DNA from: Lepidodermella squamata
Taxonomy: Eukaryota; Animalia; Gastrotricha
Assembly (NCBI GenBank): GCA_047495785.1
Contig: JBLDXI010000055.1
Span: 124,001 to 188,000 of the forward strand
DNA: 64,000 nt
Direction: 5' to 3'
Numbering within the stretch: position 1 is the stretch's first letter; every line of letters starts with the position of its first letter. Below the pieces are notes generated by a model, which had not been told where the DNA came from, searched no databases, and saw only the letters and a list, made by a program, of their open reading frames with translations. The translations under genes and the position numbers were made by a program. Positions 45,479 to 56,531 of this stretch are shown in pieces.

Positions 45479-48400
45479 TCAAATATTTGAAACGTCGACA
45501 AATTCGATGCCGCCCTCAACGTTCAGTGCTGATGCCACGAAGTCGAACCAAGTCTTTCCGATGCCAAGAGCTGAACAAGTATACCAGCACAAGTCAGCTG
45601 TACCTTCAAGATAAGCTAGAGCGCGAGATGCAATTTTTGATCCAGTCGGGTGATCGGCAGCAACAACTATTTTACGAAAATCGATAAGCAGATTGGCAGG
45701 GTTTGCAAGCAGAGCTGAAGGCGAAACGATTGCATGATTCTCACACACTTCCAACAGTTTACTGCTGCTGAGCAGGTACGAAGAGCTCACGAGTAAGGTG
45801 GCTAAAGCGCTTAGAAATTGCCGCGATATCGAGTTGAATGCATCTGAAACACGTGAACAAATAATTGCACCCATTTTTCGTCAGATTAGGCCAAAACTTA
45901 CCAAGGGAACAACCGGCAACTTTAGATATGTGATCAATCATCAGCTTCAAAATTAAGGCACACGCAGAAGAAAGGGTTTCGCAAGACTCGATATCAGAAG
46001 GCAAAAGGAAGGAAAAATCAAACCAGCCTTGGTCGCTCTGCAACGACAGCAAAAAGTCCCAGTCCGGTTTACAAAAAAGTTCGAAATCATGCGGGAAACT
46101 GATGCTGAATTTCTCTTTAACGACAGGTAATGATCGGGTAGATTCTTGGCTCAAACTGATCTCCTTCTGCGCTAATACAGCGTCTGTAGAACAATCAGTA
46201 ATAATGATACTCGCGAACGTTTCGCTAGTATATGCGCCGATAGCAACATCCCTGCCGATTTCCTGCTTCGCTAGTTCAATTCTGGCGATTTCACGGCGAA
46301 GTGGTGTCGACTTCGGGTCGGCCGTGATTTCCGATAAGACAAACTTCAATGTCACGTTACGAGCCAACAACTTAAGTTTAACAGAGCGGCTATCGCTATC
46401 AAATGTGCGCAAGTCCGAAATAATTTCATGAAAGCGCCCAGCCAAGCCTATCATACTCAATGATAAGCGCACGGGTTCGGTATTATCGAAAATGACGCTT
46501 GTCTTTTCTACAATTGGCTCAAATGAATCCTTTTCAGGAGCCAATTCTACCAATAAGGGAGAGCACGGAATGTTTGCAACAGTTTCTTCAAAGTCAAGCA
46601 GCTCCTGGCTTCCTGCTCGCTCTCTTTCGATCGATACCCTCTTGCGTTCTCGTTTTCCGCCTTTCTTTTTGCTCGCTTCAGACGACTCTCCTGTAAATGC
46701 GTCAAAGCAAACCAGCGAGTCGACATCGGTTTGCATGTCAAGATAATCACTCGTCGATGCCTTCTGGTTTTCAGTGACTTCCGCCGCTTTCCTTTCCCGC
46801 TCAGCGTCTCTGTCTCTGCGGTATGCTTCGGATTGCCCAACACGATTGCGAAGTTTCAACTCTTGTTTCATCATTTCAAAATTTGCTTCCGCAGGCGGTG
46901 GCGGGGGTGGTGGCGGTGTTGGTGGCAGTTGTGGTGACGATGATGACCACACGCTTGGAGTTGATATCGGCACTTCACTCCGTTTTGCTGGAGATTGAGG
47001 CTGTGCACTCGGCCGAGAATGAGACATTAATGCAGGTGGTAAAGCTTGTGAACCAGCTGAAATGCCGAAACTAAAAGCTGCTGGTGGCGGCGGTGGTGAT
47101 GACGACAACCCCCATGAATTTATCGGCACCACTCCACGCAGTTTTGCTGGAGATTGAGGCTGTGCACTTGGCGGAAAATCAGCTATTGATGCAGCTTGTG
47201 AAGCTTGTGCAAATTGCGGCGAGGCTACTTTCGCAGCTCCAAACAGGCCACCGGATAATGCGTTAAACGATGGCTGTGGAGATCCTAAGGAATTTGCGAC
47301 TGGTGGCGAGGAGAAACTTGTAGATGTTGGAAACGAGAGTACAGCAGGCATGGATCGTTGCAGAACTGGTTGTTTTGCACTAAAGCTCCAAGACGCACTC
47401 ATGTCGACGGAGCGTGCGCATGCGGCATGAATTCCAGACATCCCAAAACGACTAAAACAGAAAATATTTCGACATTTTAGAATAACAATTTGCACGTGAA
47501 TGCGAAAAATATAGCGTATATGAAGTTTTCCGCTCTTCAAAAGCTTGCTTTACTAGATTTAATGCGCGCATTTCTAATTCCCAAATATTCCCCAAATACA
47601 GGCTACTTATTACATGAAGCTAATGAAATTGTGGACTTACATGGATTGTTGCAGAACTGGTTGTTGTGCACTGAAGCCAACCATGACACCTTGGCTCTGT
47701 GTCATGGACGTGCTCATGTCGGCAGAGCTGATGCGATAGTAGATTGTAAATAATTAGGCAATTTATGAATATTTATAGAATTACCCAGAACAAGGAAAAA
47801 CGCCGGCACGAGATGCGGCTAGTGCAGCAAGCTTGCTTCGTTTCAACTCAAGCTCGCGTTTGCGTCGTTCCAGCTCTTCAGAATGCGATGACGATGGCGC
47901 AGGTGGACGAGCCAGCAGTTGATCGTGAGAAACAGGAGGCGGCGGCGGTAGTGGTGGAGCTTGCGACCTAAGACCAGCTGAAGCGCCGAAACCAAAAGGT
48001 GCAGATGTTACTGATTCTTCTTTTTCCTTTCTGAATTAAAGTTTTTTAGTTTGAGCAATATGATGCAAATAGGCGCTCACGATAATCTCGACAGCACAGC
48101 TGGCGCTCTCGGTGTAGCATCGGATAGGTATTCATCTCCCGAAAAGCACTTTCTTCTTGATTGGATCATCTTATTGAGAACATCATGTGGCGATTCAGAC
48201 GTTTCAGAGCGCGGGGATTCTTCACTTTTCGATTCGACAGCTTCCGAAGCTAAACCGCATTTTTAAGTAATTTATAAAATGAGTAAAAATTAGCTTACGT
48301 CCTCCACGCAACCGCAAAACCAAGCTGATAGTAGACTGATCTTGAAGTTTCATATCCTTCAAAGTAGCGCCATCATCTGCCTGTCTCCCGCCGAAAATCA

Positions 48401-51400
48401 TTCGCTGTTGGCTGGGTGGAATTCCTTCTTTGTCGCATAGCTTCTGTTTCAGCGTCTCGAACGAATCGGTTGCCGAGGCGGATAGAGCTATCGTTTTACC
48501 AGTCAGCGTTTTGACGAATATGTTCATCGGTTTTTCCACGGATTTCTCGTCGTCATCCGCATCGCCTTCCGATTCGCAGAAGCTGTCCATTGAATATCCA
48601 TCCACCTCATGGGCACGAAGAGATCGGTAATCGCCGTCATCTCCACCACCCCCACCTCCGCCTTCTCCGCCTGAACATTCTCTGGACTCTTCGTCGTCAA
48701 ACTTAACCTTGGTTTCCTTGACTGCAACGGCAGATTTCTTCCCAGATTTCAGAGAAGACAAGGGCGACTTAAGATATTTGTTCACGAGGCTCTTATTGGA
48801 CAGTTTAGTCGGTGACGCTGCTCTTTTCTTTTCAGGTGTTTTCCCCGGAACGGCTCTGACAGGCAGGGGCTTTTTCACAGCTAGTTTCCCTTTATCATCG
48901 GGTAATAATCGAGAGCTCACAGATTTTTGAATAAGCTGGTTTTCAGCTTCGGAGTAAAACGGAATCGTTTTCAGAGCATCTACGTCAGCTTCATTCAACA
49001 GACGCTCCAATAATTTGATTTGCTCCTCTTCAGACAGTATTTGCAGTGGCTTGTCCTTATCACGCTCTTCAACAGCTATGAAGCTCGTAAATTTGCTGAC
49101 TATACCAAACCGTTTACTCAAATCAATGATTTTCCCTTTCATCGCTAGTTTAACATCTTCGTCCCTGGCGGGGTCAGCGACCAAAATACCTCGATCTTGG
49201 TCGCGAATGACTGCTCTAGCGGCTAAGCGATGAACCAACGTCGTGGAACGAATGTCAAGCTGACTGACTGATAAATACCTAGTCATCTCAAAGACATCGT
49301 AGTCACGATCAACTTTCGCCTTCAATGTTGTCGACGCGCAGTAGCCCGGCAATAAGGCAAACGCTACCACCCGTTCGTGGTTGAAAATAGCCGGCATGAG
49401 ATTTGGCGACTGCAAGATTTCTGCATTGCCCTCCATATCCCATTCAAGGTGTACGTCGCGGGCGGCAGGTTCGATTATCAGCTGAACCACCCTCTCCAAC
49501 CGATTTTGAATCGACTGAATCGATGATCGAAAATCGAACTTGTTCACCGTGTTTTCACGCAGACCTTCGAACAAGCCACCGCCAAGCGTCGCAAAAACGC
49601 GCAATAAATGGCGATTCGAAGAGATTGCACTAGGCGGCTCAACAGTGAAGAGTCGAATGGAATAAGATTTCACCAGACTCGGCAAAACTTCGAAAGCTCT
49701 AATCCAATCAGAAAAATGGCCATCGCTGATTAAAACGATATTCCGATGGGTTGACGGGCGGAATCCAAGTGTAGCCGCCAGCAGGGGATTGACCACGTTT
49801 GTGCACCCCAGTTGCGGCTTACACTTCTGAATAGCCTCGAATGCCAGCAGCTTATTCTCCTCCGTTGCTAGTTGAGAAATAGGAAATAACTCGGCCCAAG
49901 ATCCACCAAACGCAACAATATTGAATGAGCAAGTGGCGGGTAAGCGGCTGATTAAAGCCATGGCAGTTATGGATGAATGAGCCCAAAGCGACTGCATAGA
50001 ATTCGACAGGTCAAGTAGAATCACAACATCGCCAGCCGATGATTGCTCAGGCATTGAAAATTCCGGGTAGAAAACAACCATAGAGGCGTAATTATCCGGT
50101 TGTTTCGGATCCTGCTCAACCCACATACGAGGAGAGTGAATTTCGGCCAGTAGAATTCTTAGCTCAAGTCCAGCCAATTCCGAACTGAAGCAGCCAGGGG
50201 CCGCATTATCAGTACCAAACTCCAACAAAGCTTTCGTTGCAGTAATTTTACGGCGGTTTGATGCAGATGGCCGGTTGTGTTTCAATGACTTGATTTCGTA
50301 CGGCATATCGATAAAGGCTTGAAAAGTGGCCTTCACGCCACTAATAGCAGAATTATCGATTATTGATGTACTCAGGTTGTCTTGAACAGCCGTCCCAGAA
50401 GCGACGATTTTCGGCGAGGCAGACGGTGGAAGTGAAAAGACGATTTCATCGCCATTCATCACTAATTCGGTGACGTAAGTGATTTTGATGACCACATCGG
50501 CCATTGGTGGTAAATTGCCGACGCTGACTTGAAACACATCCGGGGAGAAAGCGTCTTGGTCCATCAAATAAGCGCCATGTCCCTTTGAAATAGCCTCGCG
50601 ATATTCGCGATGCGCCTGCTCTTTCTCCTTGATCTGACCAACCACGTGCTTGTCGTTGATATAGGCTTCGAAGCCAGAGACAACGGCCAATTCGTCGAGC
50701 GGGAAAACGTATCGCACTTCAATCTAGAGAAGGTTAGTAAGCTAAGAAATATTGAATGAAGCATTTCACTACTTACCGAGCTTGAAGAGACGTTCTTGTA
50801 TCTTTGAAACACAACTACTTCCGCAACAACATCTAATAAGTTCGCTTTGATATGAACCTCGCGAAGAGGGATCGGCTGCTGTCCCTCCTTTGGAAGCAAC
50901 CCACCAACAGGTCCATCAGGCTTGCTAAGATCAATTGGTTTGTCTCCAGCGGATGGTTTTGCAGGAAAATCGGCAAGTTTCAGATTCTGTATCAACTTTT
51001 CATCATTAGGATCAGCAGTGAACGTTAGATTGGGCTCGCGGCGCTTGACGGTTGGCAACTGTTGAGGTTGACGTTTCGTATCGAGTTGCCCAACGAACTC
51101 GACGATATAGCTGATGCGTTGCTGGCGAGCGTCATAAATGCAAAATTCCGTGTCATCGAAATCCGATGCATCGGGGTCACCGGCTTCCGATTTTGAGATA
51201 CTGCGGCACGAGTCAAAGCCTTGCGGAGGCTTCTTCAGCTTGGTATCGCGGCGGTAGATAGGAAATGACTTTCCCAAGGCAACTTCACAAACAAGGGAGA
51301 ATCGTGTTCCACGCTGGCTTGATGGTCTTCCGGAATACTTTGCAGCAGTCAGAAAATCCGAAGCAAAATAAATTCCCTCACCCATGTTGCCTGGATCGGT

Positions 51401-52947
51401 ACGACTTCCACCCACGTCATCGACAACAACTCGCGGCAAAAGTAAACCACGGGATAAAATGCCGAAAATATTGGGAGGGGCCGAAGCGTGAAACATAACC
51501 TTACGGTTGTCCGGGCAGTTGCTGTAGGATAAGTTTCCATATTCGGCGAATCGATCGATTTTCCAAATATTCGCGACAGAATATTCAGAAGATTGTACGC
51601 GGAATGCAATGTCATCGAATTCAGCGGAACTTTCTTCGAGGCGAGTGATGTTTCCATTAATCGCATTGAAACTTAGCCACAATAAGCTGTCATTCGAGCA
51701 ATTAGATCCAAGAACTTCGAACATGGGGGCGAAATCTCGAATCAATTGAATGAGGGATTGCAACTTCCCAAGCACACGAAAACTCGGCGAATCAACCCAA
51801 TTCGGGTCAATATTAATCCCGGGTATTTGGCGCTGAAACGACTGGATAGACTCTACAAATGCCTCATGATTTCCGTCAACCAAGGCTCTTTTAGCAGTCA
51901 AGAGGGAGACCTCAGCAGTGGATAGTCGGTCCAAAGATATGTCGGCGAGGTCGCTCAGAGGTTTGTTGAGCCATTCTGAAAGAGTGTTGAGCGAATCATT
52001 CACCAAATCTTCAACAAGACCCATCACCTGCAATAACGTCAAAGAAAGAAGAATAAATTAGATAATAAACGTAAGATACATACAGGCTTTTCTGATGGTT
52101 TCCGAGGTTTTTCGAACAACAAATTACGCAATAGTTTCGATCCGATAGCCAGTGATGAAACCTCGCCGGTTCTGAGAGTGAAATCTGATACATTTCCAGC
52201 GGAAAGTATTTGCTGAACAAGCGCGTTGAATAGTACTAGCGCATCTTTTCTGTTCTCCGCAACATAATATTTGACAGTTCCGCGTACATTCCAAATTTCG
52301 ACGCGGTATTTCGTTGAATTTTGCGAATCCCAATTAGGAATAGCTTGTAATTCTATCGAAATTGTTTTTTGTTCCGACTCGTCAAACATCATGCGGTATT
52401 TCACGAGAACAGTGTCAGCGGCCGGGAATTCAGGGCAGTTACTTTCATTATACTCAGTGAATCGATTTATCACTGATTCTGGATCTCCGTTGAATATGTC
52501 CTCATTGGTGTGAGAATCCACAGCACTGGAACTGGTGAATTTAGTCTCCGAATGCTTGCAAACATATTCTTCGCTAAGCTCGACTATGCCATCTTCATCA
52601 ATGCAGTCATCGATGTAACGGGCGAGAACGATCTGAATACCTCGTTTTGCTGCTGATACAGCTTTCGAGCTCGACAATTGGATCGCGTCAAATATTAGTA
52701 GGTAGACAACCGATTTCGAAAGGATGTATGACACAATTGCTCCTCGATCCGTTAATTTTGCTTTGAATGAGTTTTTGAACTTGAATTGATGATTTGGCAA
52801 AAACTCTACCGCAAATGTTTTCCCTTCGAAAATTTGAGTCGGCTTAGGAGTGAAGTCGTTGTTCACTGGAGGAGTTTTATCTGGTTCGAGTTTCACATGT
52901 TTTTGAAGTAGCCTGTTTCCAAGGTCTCGACGTCCGACTTTCATCAT
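45479..52947 (-). CDS. PARP4: Vault poly(ADP-ribose) polymerase PARP4-like: BRCT - PARP - VIT - vWA - internal ubiquitin - Pro/Ser-rich region - MVP-interacting C-terminus
   Basis: BRCT (IFEGKTF..GAIV); PARP triad FHAS / GIYF..KYS / DTEF; VIT ([37 protein letters not shown]); vWA MIDAS DLSNS..SDG; C-terminal [10 protein letters not shown] resembling the PARP4 tail. Confidence 0.92.
48300..48527 (-). other. Complete 76-aa ubiquitin domain embedded in PARP4
   Basis: [13 protein letters not shown]...[19 protein letters not shown]; 48/76 identical to ubiquitin by manual count. Confidence 0.95.
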
Positions 52948-53063: not shown

Positions 53064-54113
53064 TCAATTCCCTTTCCGATTTGCTTCTTCCATTTTCTTG
53101 TTGTGAATCGCCAGTTTTCTGAAGCTGTTCATCATCATAAAAACAATCCTATCGAACATGAACTTTGGAAGTAGTGACGCAAAGGTCCCTTGCAGTTCAT
53201 GCATGAAGTGACCGTGAGTCGAAGCAAGGCCTATTGTTCTCAAACTAGAAGCGACGTAATCAGAAGCTGGCGGCACGAAGACATTACCACGGCCTTCCAA
53301 ACGAGCCATTTTCGTCGCGACAAACCAAGGTGCAAGAGCTTGCACCATAACCCCAGGACACGCTTTAGCGCATTCGAGTTGAAGAGAATAGGAAAATTGG
53401 TTCATGAAATTTTTCGTCGTTCCATACATGACGAAAAGATAAGGCGGTAAAGACCCAGCGATAGAAGAAACGTTTATAATCAGGCCTCGATTTTTCGCCG
53501 CCATTTTTGGCATCACAATATGAGCCATTGTGGTCATCGCGACTATATTAACGTTGATCATATCATTCATAAATTGGCGAGAGGTCTCCCAATAGTACAA
53601 AATGTCATCGCAAACCATTCCAACATTATTGACTAGAACACCAATATCCAAATCTTTCAACTCCTTCTCAATTTTATCGAAGACACCTATTTTCGAAAAA
53701 TCGGCAGCAATGTGACGGATTTTGACATTTGGATAATCAATAGATATCCTCCTAGCAGCAGCAGCCACACGATCCTCGGAGCGACTAATGAGAACAACAT
53801 TCATGCCTCTCTGGGCTAACTGTTCCGCATAGGCCTGTGATAAATTAGCAGTAATATTGACTTATATCATCTTCAAACTGCCTCAATCAACCTGGCCGAT
53901 TCCGTCGCTAGCGCCAGTAACAACAGCCCATGCTCCCAGCTTACGAAAATCTTTGAAGCAAATCAGCCGGACAAAAATATTGCGTAGAAAACGAAAAACA
54001 AGCGATAAAGCAGTTGATAAAACAGCGTAGCACCCGATGAGTAAAAAAGGCCATAAAGGCACCGAGTGAAACTCGATTTTAAATAGAGACATAAGCTCTG
54101 ATAAAACATCCAT
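53064..54113 (-). CDS. HSD17B12/KAR-like SDR; 2 exons
   Basis: WAVVTGASDGIG|.AYAEQLA, VLVNNVG, YGTTK, PWFVATKM. Confidence 0.85.
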
Positions 54114-54265
54114 TTTAAATTCAAATATCTAAATTTTAATAGATAATATCTAATGTTAGTCATAAGTATTTAAAACGCAAAATACATGAACCACGCGAAA
54201 CAGATAAATTAGTAGTTCTTTGACTACAAACTGACTATAATTGAATTATCGTCTCTTTGAGATAC

Positions 54266-55174
54266 TCATTCTGCAGTAGGACGAATGCTATGACGAAAGC
54301 GTTTAATGCAGTAAGTCAAGATCTGACGAGGAACCAGCGACATGAGCAACATTTCAAATTCGTGATAAATGCAGCCGGTACATCGCGGAAGACGACCGGG
54401 TGTCGTAATAGCCCATGAGACGTAATGGGATGGGCTCAATACGTGAAAGCGCGATTCAGCTTGATTTGAAAGTTTTGTTGCTACAAAGCACGGAATGAGA
54501 TCTTGAACATGCATATTCGTGCTTATCATTTTCGACTCCGAATTCATACTATCAGAAAACGCTGATAAAGCGTGCTTAGAAGCGGAATAAATGGATGACA
54601 TGTAAGGAGGGAGTGCGCCAGCAGCCGAAGATACATTTATCAACACTCCTTTCGATTTATCAACAAAAGACGGGAGCAGAACTCGAGTCATCATTAGAGC
54701 AGATACGAAATTGCAATTGATCGTTTTCTCAATAAAATTGGGTGAATATTCCCAGAAATACCGTGGATGATCCGCAGCCATTCCAACGTTATTTATCAAT
54801 ACTCCGACATCCAGTCCAGAGAGTTGCTCTTTGATAGAATCGTAAACGTCCACTTGAGATAAATCTGCGGTAATAGTGCGTACTTGAACGTTGAAACGTT
54901 CTTCGATTTCACTAGCAACTGATTTAAGCCGAGATTCTGTCCGGCTGACCAGAACAAGATCAACACCTCTAGAAGCAAGCTCAAAAGCGTAAGCTTTTCC
55001 AATCCCGTCAGTGCTTCCAGTAATGCAAGCGTATTTCCCGAAGCTCTTGAAATCCAAGCAAGGTCCCAGAAAATAGCCATAGACAAAGCGGAATATCAGA
55101 AATAGGAATTGAAGAGCGTAATGAAACATGACTGCTATACCAAGCCACCAAATCATTTCATCGATCATTTTCAA
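54266..55174 (-). CDS. HSD17B12/KAR-like SDR; intronless
   Basis: Single ORF containing ITGSTDGIGKAYAFELA, LINNVG and YSASK. Confidence 0.85.
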   Translation of the reverse strand: MKMIDEMIWWLGIAVMFHYALQFLFLIFRFVYGYFLGPCLDFKSFGKYACITGSTDGIGKAYAFELASRGVDLVLVSRTESRLKSVASEIEERFNVQVRTITADLSQVDVYDSIKEQLSGLDVGVLINNVGMAADHPRYFWEYSPNFIEKTINCNFVSALMMTRVLLPSFVDKSKGVLINVSSAAGALPPYMSSIYSASKHALSAFSDSMNSESKMISTNMHVQDLIPCFVATKLSNQAESRFHVLSPSHYVSWAITTPGRLPRCTGCIYHEFEMLLMSLVPRQILTYCIKRFRHSIRPTAE

Positions 55175-55483
55175 AATCTTCTAAAAAATAAATCATCAAA
55201 TTTTAGATCGAAGAGTGTGCTATTTATCTACGGAATTCGTCACAAATTTTGCGTTGTTGTAGGATATATCATAACATCAGATCGAAAGCAAGCAATAACA
55301 GCGAAAAGCAGTAGCTACAATATTGCGCAATTTTTGCGCATTGGGGATAAAGCTAATAACATATTACGTATATATGTCCCATTCACCGCGAACTCATCAT
55401 CAATAAATTGAATCAAGGCATAAATGCCACTCATCTGAGCCGATCCATCCTCCTTAATCACATATTGTATTTGGCATTGTGTG

Positions 55484-56531
55484 TTAATCACTCTTTGAGG
55501 AAGTGGCCTTCTTTTTGAGAGCACGAGCCCGGGTGCTGATCAGCTGGGACATCACAAGATGGCGCAGAATAACTTCAGGTAAAAGGGAGATGAAAAACCC
55601 TTGCAGCTCGTGCATAATGGCACCATGAGTCGAAGAGAGGTGGCCAACAGTCTTCAGACTCTCCTTCACGTAAGATGTCGGCGAAGGAATAAATAACGAG
55701 GCCGAGCGAATTTTCGAAAGCTTGGTGGCAACGAAAAACGGAGCCACATTTTGCACAATAATGCCTTTCCCGCTACACTCAATAGACAACGCCTCGGATA
55801 AAGTATTGACGAAGGCCTTGCTGGCGGCGTAAACGCTGAGAAGTGGCGGGGGTAGCATGCTTGAAACCGAGGACACGTTGATAATCAGTCCCTTCTTTTT
55901 CTCGATCATAGATGGCAGAACAATGCCTGGAGAGAAAAATGACAATTTTCGACAAAAGGACTCGAGATTTAATCTTACGGCTCATCATTGAGACCGACAG
56001 CATATTGACATTGATAAGTTTTTGAATTAATTCAGCGGGGACGTTCTGGAAAAACTCTGGATGCTCAAAGCCCATCCCAACATTATTGACCAGTACTCCA
56101 ATGTCCAAACCGTTCAATTCTTGACCGATTTTATCGTAAATATCGGGTGAACTGAAGTCAGCGGCATGCCATTTAACCTGAACCTTGGAAGCTGACTGAA
56201 TCTCTGCGGCGGTTTCTTTAAGCTTTTCGGCCGAACGGCTAATCAGAAAAATATTCAGCCCACGCTTTCCAAGTTCTTCGGCATAAGCCTTGAAAGGTTT
56301 ATTAATAAGGATTATGAAAGGGAAGTAACGAATAATTTAACGATGACAAACCTTTCCGATACCATCTGTTGATCCAGTAACAACTGCCCATGATCCAAGA
56401 TCAGCGAAGTTTACACCAGGACCAGCGAAATGACCCTTCAGGCCGCGGAGAAGTCGCACCAACAACTTCAGAGAAATAATTACCAAGAAAGCCAAGCCCA
56501 CGTAGTAAGGTAATTGTGCCTTCATATCCAT
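55484..56531 (-). CDS. HSD17B12: HSD17B12/KAR-like SDR; 3 exons
   Basis: WAVVTGSTDGIGK|AYAEELG, LVNNVG, YAASK, PFFVATKLSKIR; closest paralog of the gene at 18667. Confidence 0.87.

What the first reader, a model, noticed from the sequence alone, without database searches (positions are those of the whole stretch)
48222..48527. Vault PARP4 with an internal ubiquitin whose cleavage site is set by a 49-nt intron (GG-Pro versus GG-Arg)
Seen: a full ubiquitin (about 63% identical; L8/I44/V70 patch, R42, R72 and LRLRGG intact) sits between the vWA region and the C-terminal MVP-binding region. A GT-AG intron (48250-48298) starts one base after the GG codons. Spliced, the junction reads LRLRGG-P-SEAVES and continues to the PARP4 C-terminus. 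With the intron retained, it reads [11 protein letters not shown] and stops at 48222. Known: vertebrate PARP4 has no ubiquitin domain, and DUBs cleave linear Ub-X fusions efficiently except when X is Pro. Inference: the spliced form is a DUB-resistant, vault-anchored PARP displaying a Ub patch. The retained form could be trimmed to a vault-free PARP-VIT-vWA-Ub-GG that E1/E2/E3 could conjugate to targets, i.e. an ADP-ribosyltransferase deliverable as a ubiquitin-like tag.
Basis: partly seen in the sequence, partly recalled or inferred. Interest (0 to 1): 0.85.

Follow-up and report, generated by a model that had tools for sequence, protein, structure and literature searches.

The report
PARP4 gene with built-in ubiquitin domain
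This animal's vault-type PARP4 gene carries a real ubiquitin domain followed directly by a proline, an old arrangement shared with molluscs, a sponge and Euglena; the small intron at the junction is an ordinary spliced intron, not a switch.

Summary
On the minus strand lies an 8-exon, 2,318-aa PARP4-family gene (52947-45479): BRCT-like, PARP catalytic domain with H-Y-E, VIT, vWA, a full ubiquitin domain (48527-48300; Pfam E 5e-23; 60.5% identical to ubiquitin) ending LRLRGG, then a low-complexity tail and a diverged MINT-like C-terminal domain. The 49-nt GT..AG intron (48298-48250) starts one base after the GG codons. RNA contigs show it spliced exactly as predicted, giving GG-Pro. No RNA contig covers its interior.

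The architecture is not new: PARP-VIT-vWA-ubiquitin proteins are annotated in over 25 molluscs, a sponge, Euglena and Acanthamoeba. Pro follows GG in 25 of 36 such proteins, while the residues after it vary, so a DUB-resistant junction looks selected. Three distant loci encode GG-Pro with no intron, and a sea slug has its intron 13 nt further on. The intron therefore does not set the junction. Retention would leave a stop codon 141 nt before the next junction, a likely NMD target, and GG-Arg-Lys follows automatically from C|GTAAG. The conjugatable-PARP idea has no support here. The scan's earlier notes hold nothing on this gene.

The parts
45479..52947 (-). Whole PARP4-like gene model: 8 exons, 2,318 aa, no internal stop
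   Evidence: Model assembled. Five downstream introns are confirmed by RNA contigs. The two upstream introns are predicted from consensus sites and homology.
52582..52839 (-). BRCT-like region in exon 1 (exon 1 = 52084-52947)
   Evidence: Pfam BRCT_2 E 0.01 and BRCT E 0.027, both below the curated cut-off.
51095..51595 (-). PARP catalytic domain with H-Y-E triad (exon 2 = 50777-52027)
   Evidence: Pfam PF00644 E 4.7e-22. The motifs FHAS, GIYF and TEF align with H, Y and E of other PARP4s.
50724..50776 (-). Intron 2, 53 nt, phase 0: GTAAGT...TTACTAAC...CTCTAG (predicted)
   Evidence: Read. It joins ...YKNVSSSS to IEVRYVFPL, restoring a complete VIT domain.
50475..50714 (-). VIT domain (C-terminal part of the Pfam match)
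   Evidence: PF08487 E 1.2e-25.
49635..50030 (-). von Willebrand factor A domain
   Evidence: PF13768, PF00092 and PF13519, E 3e-9 to 2e-7.
48300..48527 (-). In-chain ubiquitin domain, model residues 1438-1513, ending LRLRGG
   Evidence: PF00240 E 5.3e-23 over profile 1-72/72. 46/76 identical to canonical ubiquitin, with R48, D63 and S68.
48250..48298 (-). Intron 3, 49 nt, phase 1, splits the CCT Pro codon directly after GG
   Evidence: GTAAGC...GGTTTAG. RNA joint 48249>48299 and zero RNA depth at 48285. Only the DNA run holds intron words.
48222..48224 (-). TGA stop that would end a retained-intron product (GG-RKLIF...IEK*)
   Evidence: It lies 141 nt upstream of the next exon junction at 48081.
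46086..48249 (-). Exons 4-6 and most of exon 7: Ser/Pro/Ala-rich low-complexity tail with a few FG/GLFG-like motifs, a duplicated SAQPQSPAK, and a charged coiled-coil-like stretch. Introns at 48031-48080, 47728-47784 and 47452-47640.
   Evidence: RNA joints. Translation. Composition and motifs.
45512..46085 (-). Diverged MINT/MVPID-like C-terminal domain (model residues 2137-2308), interrupted by intron 7 (45844-45901)
   Evidence: Profile of 89 PARP4 C-termini: 15.9 bits, E 5e-7 (Z = 1), 0 of 300 shuffles as high. The same domain in P0121 matches human PARP4 1571-1717 in PDB 9bw6/9bw7.

Best explanation
This is a constitutively spliced PARP4-family (clade 5, vault-type) ADP-ribosyltransferase. 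It belongs to an old, widespread but unstudied subfamily in which a ubiquitin domain sits in the flexible linker between the VIT-vWA block and the C-terminal MINT-like domain. The 49-nt intron is an ordinary intron that happens to split the Pro codon in this lineage. Shown: the gene structure, the splicing, the domain order, and conservation across the subfamily of the ubiquitin recognition surface (L8, R42, I/V44, V70), the RLRGG tail and the following Pro. Also shown: the chain-building lysines K29, K48 and K63 are not conserved. Inferred mechanism: Pro after G76 keeps general deubiquitinases from cutting the chain. PARP4 therefore carries a permanently attached, mono-ubiquitin-like handle that ubiquitin receptors or DUB-type clefts can bind. 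It is unlikely to serve as a K48/K63 chain acceptor or as a UFD-type degron.
For: Gene model and H-Y-E triad. Splicing: one search shows five GT..AG joints, including 48249>48299, and no RNA depth inside the intron. One search shows the RNA run holds no intron words. Subfamily: 10 of 47 PARP4-like representatives carry a ubiquitin after vWA. PF00240-bearing PARP4-like proteins occur in many bivalves and gastropods, the sponge Dysidea, Euglena and Acanthamoeba. Seventeen of them also have the MINT-like C-terminus. After GG the next residue is Pro in 25, Gly in 6, Leu in 4 and His in 1. L8 25/26, K27 26/26, R42 25/26, I/V44 26/26, V70 25/26, R74 and G75 26/26, G76 24/26; by contrast K48 12/26, K63 4/26, K29 5/26. 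The Pro does not depend on the intron. That Ub-Pro fusions resist DUBs is my own knowledge of the ubiquitin-fusion literature. PMC3791797 only lists Ub-Pro-beta-gal among UFD model substrates.
Against: Near-invariance of RLRGG is the usual mark of a ubiquitin that is cleaved or activated; integral UBL domains usually lose it (my own knowledge). Some lineages have cleavable junctions: GG-G in heterobranch snails, GG-L, GG-H. No protein-level data exist for any member. Ubiquitin presence is patchy on the VIT-vWA tree, needing at least 7 changes, so one ancient origin with many losses is not proven. The counts of Pro include isoforms and related species and are not independent events.
Confidence: 0.55

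Rival explanations
1. Built-in processing site. A specialised or slow deubiquitinase cuts after G76 and separates the PARP-VIT-vWA-Ub enzyme half from its MINT-like anchor. Pro merely restricts cleavage to the right enzyme or time.
For: RLRGG, R42 and R72, the residues that DUB clefts read, are nearly invariant even where the domain is only about 40% identical to ubiquitin. Several lineages have cleavable GG-G, GG-L or GG-H junctions. The domain sits in the linker that Suskiewicz 2023 (PMC10450202) speculated could be a cleavage site changing vault association.
Against: Pro at P1' is the one residue known to impair DUB cleavage, and it is the conserved state. Acanthamoeba, P0401, P0052 and Batillaria have lost G76 or GG yet keep the domain. 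There is no protein evidence.
Confidence: 0.25
2. Regulated retention of the 49-nt intron yields PARP-VIT-vWA-Ub-GG-Arg..., which DUBs trim to a free Ub C-terminus so that E1/E2/E3 can conjugate the whole enzyme to targets.
For: The retained frame does read GG-RKLIF... and stops at 48222-48224. The relative L001 would read GG-RKFHF....
Against: No RNA contig covers the intron. The stop lies 141 nt before the next of four downstream junctions, making a classical NMD target (the EJC rule is my own knowledge). Arg-Lys follows automatically from C|GTAAG. The intron position is absent from L002, L003 and the P0059 gene, and is shifted in Plakobranchus. A 1-nt deletion inside the intron in run X2 would change the retained frame. 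The intron looks like its six neighbours in size and AT content.
Confidence: 0.03
3. A relic domain with no specific role, or a gene-model artefact that joins two genes.
For: Ubiquitin has been lost from many PARP4 lineages, including vertebrates, echinoderms and cnidarians, so it is dispensable for core PARP4 function.
Against: One uninterrupted ORF runs from VIT through the ubiquitin. Spliced RNA contigs chain the ubiquitin exon to all downstream exons. The same order occurs in dozens of species. Surface and tail residues are conserved while the overall sequence drifts.
Confidence: 0.05

Closest known systems
Vertebrate PARP4 (vPARP, clade 5 PARP)
   Same: Mid-protein PARP catalytic domain with H-Y-E, then VIT-vWA, then a long disordered linker and a C-terminal helical MINT/MVPID domain. 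The best non-ubiquitin hits are animal PARP4s.
   Different: No vertebrate hit has PF00240. The window has a ubiquitin in the linker, only a sub-threshold BRCT match, and a very diverged MINT-like domain with Ala where human R1689 contacts MVP.
Annotated PARP4-like proteins with a ubiquitin domain (molluscs, Dysidea avara, Euglena gracilis, Acanthamoeba castellanii 'ubiquitin domain containing protein'); noted briefly for Acanthamoeba by Perina 2014, PMC4245714
   Same: The same order PARP-VIT-vWA-Ub-tail(-MINT). Most end RLRGG-Pro.
   Different: At most 53% identity to the window in VIT-vWA. Only the window and L001 have the intron 1 nt after GG. Some relatives have two ubiquitin domains or a decayed tail.
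[quoted passage not shown]
   Same: Ubiquitin joined through G76 to Pro. Resistance of that junction to DUBs is my own knowledge; PMC3791797 lists Ub-Pro-beta-gal as a UFD substrate.
   Different: Here the ubiquitin is internal (residues 1438-1513 of 2,318), not N-terminal. K48 is Arg in the window, and K29 and K48 are not conserved in the subfamily, so a UFD degron role is unlikely.
Natural ubiquitin-fusion precursors (polyubiquitin, Ub-ribosomal protein fusions)
   Same: An in-frame ubiquitin keeping RLRGG at a junction with downstream protein.
   Different: Those have non-Pro residues after GG and are cleaved rapidly (my own knowledge). Here Pro is conserved, and the ubiquitin has 1,437 residues of enzyme in front of it.
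Integral ubiquitin-like (UBL) domains such as those of Rad23 or parkin
   Same: An in-chain beta-grasp domain used as a recognition module. This is what the favoured mechanism works like.
   Different: Those generally lack the RLRGG tail (my own knowledge). Here the tail is nearly invariant.

Membership tests
PARP4 / clade 5 PARP | [quoted passage not shown] | tested here: met
   PF00644 E 4.7e-22. H, Y and E align with six PARP4s.
PARP4 / clade 5 PARP | VIT and vWA domains C-terminal to the catalytic domain | tested here: met
   PF08487 E 1.2e-25 and three vWA models. 36-45% identity over about 550 aa to the other PARP4-like representatives, 53% to the close relative P0004.
PARP4 / clade 5 PARP | N-terminal BRCT domain | tested here: inconclusive
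   BRCT_2 E 0.01 and BRCT E 0.027, both below the Pfam cut-offs.
PARP4 / clade 5 PARP | C-terminal MVP-interacting (MINT/MVPID) domain | tested here: met
   Homology only: 15.9 bits, E 5e-7 for the single target, 0 of 300 shuffles as high. The profile's domain maps to human PARP4 1571-1717. The R1689 equivalent appears to be Ala.
PARP4 / clade 5 PARP | Physical association with MVP or vault particles | not testable with these tools
   No MVP gene could be looked for in this genome. Lodwick 2025 reports that the PARP4-contacting MVP residues are present only in vertebrates.
Ubiquitin family (PF00240) | Full-length beta-grasp match with the L8/I44/V70 patch, R42 and R72 | tested here: met
   E 5.3e-23 over profile 1-72/72. 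Residues checked (H68 is Ser).
Ubiquitin family (PF00240) | C-terminal LRLRGG | tested here: met
Ubiquitin family (PF00240) | Chain-forming K48 and K63 | tested here: not met
   R48 and D63 in the window. K48 in 12/26 and K63 in 4/26 of the subfamily.
Ubiquitin family (PF00240) | Free G76 carboxylate produced by processing and used by E1 | not testable with these tools
   Needs protein chemistry.
UFD-type non-cleavable ubiquitin fusion | Pro directly after G76 | tested here: met
   CCT restored by splicing. Pro in 25 of 36 relatives.
UFD-type non-cleavable ubiquitin fusion | Ubiquitin at the N-terminus with K29/K48 as chain acceptors | tested here: not met
   Ubiquitin at residues 1438-1513 of 2,318. 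K48 is Arg, and K29 is kept in only 5/26.
Regulated intron-retention switch | Retained transcripts present; intron position conserved wherever the junction is conserved | tested here: not met
   No RNA contig in the intron (contigs can miss rare forms). Intron absent or shifted in L002, L003, the P0059 gene and L004.

The most novel reading that the evidence does not exclude
A Pro-tolerant deubiquitinase cuts after G76 under some condition. This frees PARP-VIT-vWA-Ub from its MINT-like anchor and exposes a ubiquitin C-terminus that E1/E2/E3 can use, so that a whole ADP-ribosyltransferase is conjugated to targets like a ubiquitin tag. The near-invariant RLRGG, R42 and R72 do not exclude it.
Probability: 0.04. 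Interest if true: 0.9.

Novelty: new member of a known kind. Interest (0 to 1): 0.4.

Why it matters
Links between ADP-ribosylation and ubiquitin are an active field, and PARP4's role in vaults is still unclear. A PARP4 subfamily from amoebae and Euglena to sponges and molluscs carries a ubiquitin whose recognition surface, RLRGG tail and following Pro are conserved, while its chain lysines are not. That gives a concrete, testable hypothesis. The ubiquitin may be a permanent handle, or a guarded cleavage site, in the very linker that ties the enzyme to its C-terminal anchor. I found no paper describing this junction. The gene in this window is one more member of that subfamily, and its intron adds nothing special.

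Tried and rejected
Direct phmmer of the post-ubiquitin tail against 47 PARP4-like proteins found nothing. Only profiles worked.

The Pfam copy has no model for the PARP4 C-terminal domain. It is blank even on true PARP4 tails.

phmmer of the exon 7 end against PDB gave only a chance tRNA methyltransferase hit, E 0.07.

The exhaustive protein search was flooded by polyubiquitins, so PARP4-like hits had to be sorted out locally.

The VIT-vWA tree puts the window and L001 on a long branch beside dictyostelids and Euglena. I treat that as long-branch attraction and draw no conclusion about origin.

The neighbour SDR search did not identify the organism. The best named hit was a trematode at 38%.

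Mollusc loci for P0160, P0161 and P0173 are not on record, and P0155 and P0059 came without DNA. The intron comparison in molluscs therefore rests on one species (L004).

The scan's earlier notes hold nothing on this gene.

I considered a recent ubiquitin retro-insertion and rejected it. The domain is only 60% identical to ubiquitin, and the syntenic relative's domain is only 39/76 identical to ubiquitin.

I did not run structure prediction. The MINT-like domain is split by an intron and has no single reference, and the Pfam match already settles the ubiquitin fold.
Full report
**What is there**

Reading the minus strand shows a long ORF (48222-50717). Its product has Pfam VIT, vWA and, at residues 733-804, a full-length ubiquitin match (E 3.9e-21). 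The 76-residue piece alone scores E 5.3e-23 over profile positions 1-72 of 72.

The ORF just upstream (50564-52042) holds a PARP catalytic domain (E 4.7e-22). The one before it has a sub-threshold BRCT match.

The ubiquitin (48527-48300) is 46/76 = 60.5% identical to canonical ubiquitin. L8, R42, I44, V70, R72 and LRLRGG are intact. K48 is Arg, K63 is Asp and H68 is Ser.

Directly after the GG codons the DNA reads C|GTAAGC...GGTTTAG|CT. This is a 49-nt phase-1 intron (48298-48250) whose removal restores CCT = Pro followed by SEAVES. If read through, the frame gives [10 protein letters not shown]... and stops at TGA 48224-48222.

**Transcript evidence**

Two public runs hold the region. When laid on 45760-51700, run X2 shows no joints and covers the introns, so it is genomic DNA.

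Run X1 shows five joints with CT..AC ends on the + strand, which is GT..AG on the gene strand:
- 45843>45902
- 47451>47641
- 47727>47785
- 48030>48081
- 48249>48299 (the intron in question)

X1 has zero depth at 48285 inside the 49-nt intron, and zero depth at positions inside the 189-nt intron. The joint of interest rests on one contig with a 20-nt anchor on its shorter side, so it is exact but thin. Contigs also drop rare forms.

In a second test I searched a stretch in which every 31-mer includes intron sequence. Only the DNA run holds it. So the spliced form exists, and no retained form was seen.

**Gene model**

Two consensus introns upstream complete the model: 52083-52028, and 50776-50724, which has a TACTAAC branch site. 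The gene then has 8 exons, 6,957 coding bases and 2,318 residues with no internal stop. Its seven AT-rich GT..AG introns are 49-189 nt long, and the H-Y-E triad aligns with other PARP4s.

The ubiquitin occupies residues 1438-1513. After it come about 430 Ser/Pro/Ala-rich residues with a few FG/GLFG-like motifs and a charged coiled-coil-like stretch.

The C-terminal domain gave no direct phmmer or Pfam hit. A profile built from 89 PARP4 C-termini scores it 15.9 bits, E 5e-7 for this single target, and none of 300 shuffles reached that value (maximum 8.0). Shared collinear motifs include W-x-x-L-x-LQ-x-x-G-W, ATLLV and C-x-x-L-x-x-G-x-x-W.

The same profile domain maps to human PARP4 1571-1717 in the solved vault complex. 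That region is the MINT domain (Lodwick 2025, PMC12280208; called MVPID in Suskiewicz 2023, PMC10450202).

Homology is therefore supported, but binding is not shown. The window appears to have Ala where human R1689 contacts MVP. Lodwick 2025 also reports that the MVP residues contacting PARP4 are present only in vertebrates.

**Is the architecture new?**

No. In an exhaustive search, 47 of the best 150 representatives are PARP4-like, and 10 of these carry a ubiquitin after vWA. Named ones come from Biomphalaria, Sinanodonta, Plakobranchus and Euglena gracilis.

A search with the Sinanodonta protein lists PF00240-bearing 'PARP4-like' proteins in many bivalves and gastropods and in the sponge Dysidea avara. 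Often a ubiquitin-less PARP4 paralogue occurs in the same species. PARP4s of vertebrates, echinoderms, amphioxus, cnidarians and Trichoplax lack the domain.

Acanthamoeba castellanii and another protist have the same layout. Perina 2014 (PMC4245714) already mentions ubiquitin-related domains in two Acanthamoeba clade 5 PARPs. Citarelli 2010 does not mention a ubiquitin domain in clade 5. I found no paper on the animal proteins or on the junction.

On a VIT-vWA tree the ubiquitin label needs at least 7 changes. One ancient gain with many losses is plausible but not proven.

**The junction across the subfamily**

After GG the next residue is Pro in 25 proteins, Gly in 6 (heterobranch snails), Leu in 4 and His in 1. 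A few proteins have lost GG. The count includes some isoforms and close species.

Pro is present in the window, its relative L001, three unnamed lineages, Euglena, the sponge, two bivalve groups and several gastropods. The residues that follow cannot be aligned.

Across 26 domains these positions are nearly invariant, even at about 40% identity to ubiquitin:
- L8 (25), K27 (26), R42 (25), I/V44 (26), V70 (25)
- R74 and G75 (26 each), G76 (24)

The chain-building lysines are not conserved: K48 (12), K63 (4), K29 (5). Selection therefore acts on the recognition surface, the tail and the Pro, not on chain-building sites.

**Does the intron set the junction?**

No. The syntenic metagenome relative L001 (SDR genes, then the PARP4-like gene; about 53% identity) has the same phase-1 intron: GGT GGG C|GTAAGT, 61 nt, AAACAG|CT.

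L002, L003 and the P0059 gene encode VIT-vWA-Ub-GG-Pro in one continuous ORF. In Plakobranchus the intron starts 13 nt after GG. The Pro is older than the intron and independent of it.

Four further points bear on retention:
- GG-Arg-Lys on retention follows automatically from C|GTAAG.
- The retained peptide differs between the window, L001 and the X2 haplotype, which has a 1-nt deletion in the intron.
- The premature stop lies 141 nt before the next of four downstream junctions. By the usual exon-junction rule (my own knowledge) that predicts nonsense-mediated decay.
- The intron resembles its neighbours in size and composition.

**How it most likely works**

Shown: a single mRNA encodes PARP-VIT-vWA-Ub-Pro-tail-MINT-like.

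Inferred (about 0.55): Pro after G76 protects the junction from general deubiquitinases. That Ub-Pro fusions are poor DUB substrates is my own knowledge of the ubiquitin-fusion literature; the cited review only lists Ub-Pro-beta-gal as a UFD substrate. The domain would then act as a permanent ubiquitin-like handle for receptors or DUB-type clefts. With R48 and D63, and with K29/K48 not conserved, a UFD-type degron or chain-acceptor role is unlikely.

Main rival (about 0.25): the conserved RLRGG marks a guarded cleavage site. Cutting there would release the enzyme half from its anchor, in the linker that Suskiewicz 2023 speculated might be cleaved. The GG-G, GG-L and GG-H variants fit this reading.

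**Verdict**

The gene is a new member of an already annotated but unstudied PARP4-ubiquitin subfamily. The conserved RLRGG-Pro junction is the worthwhile lead; the intron is ordinary.

Noticed in passing
window 53064-56117 (minus strand); L001 564-3682: Tandem array of at least three HSD17B12-like short-chain dehydrogenase genes directly upstream of the PARP4-like gene. The same SDR-then-PARP4 order occurs in the metagenome relative L001, so the synteny is conserved.
   Followed up: partly
window 48346-48638: Two haplotypes at about equal depth (65 vs 62.6) in DNA run X2, also seen in RNA run X1. They differ at 15 positions plus a 3-nt indel at 48576, about 5% divergence across the ubiquitin exon. 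The differences listed within the ubiquitin give A14T and T20S plus silent changes.
   Followed up: partly
window 46900-48030 (model residues 1582-1812): The post-ubiquitin tail has FG / GLFG / FxFG-like motifs (PFGFG, GGLFG, FSFG) in a Ser/Pro/Ala-rich stretch, and a duplicated SAQPQSPAK. The L001 tail also has SLFG. This is reminiscent of FG-nucleoporin repeats, but with only about five motifs.
   Followed up: no
P0123 residues 646-801; P0129 residues 620-772: Two unnamed PARP4-like proteins carry two tandem ubiquitin-like domains. The first is degenerate and lacks GG; the second ends LRLRGG-Pro.
   Followed up: no
P0174:1380-2468 (Ruditapes) and many rows: PARP4-like tails carry extra appended domains in different species: a synaptobrevin match (E 1.8e-12) 22 residues after the ubiquitin in Ruditapes, and precomputed actin, HSP70, 14-3-3 or EF-hand hits elsewhere. 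Some may be annotation fusions. Perina 2014 noted actin and 14-3-3.
   Followed up: no
P0169 vs P0187 (Dysidea avara isoforms): Two annotated isoforms of the sponge gene differ at the ubiquitin C-terminus: LRLRGG-PP in one versus a decayed ...LGGAP-P in the other. This suggests alternative exons or tandem copies.
   Followed up: no
window 50724-50776: Intron 2 contains a perfect TACTAAC branch-site motif. All seven introns are short (49-189 nt) and AT-rich (22-38% GC) against 43% GC for the window.
   Followed up: no
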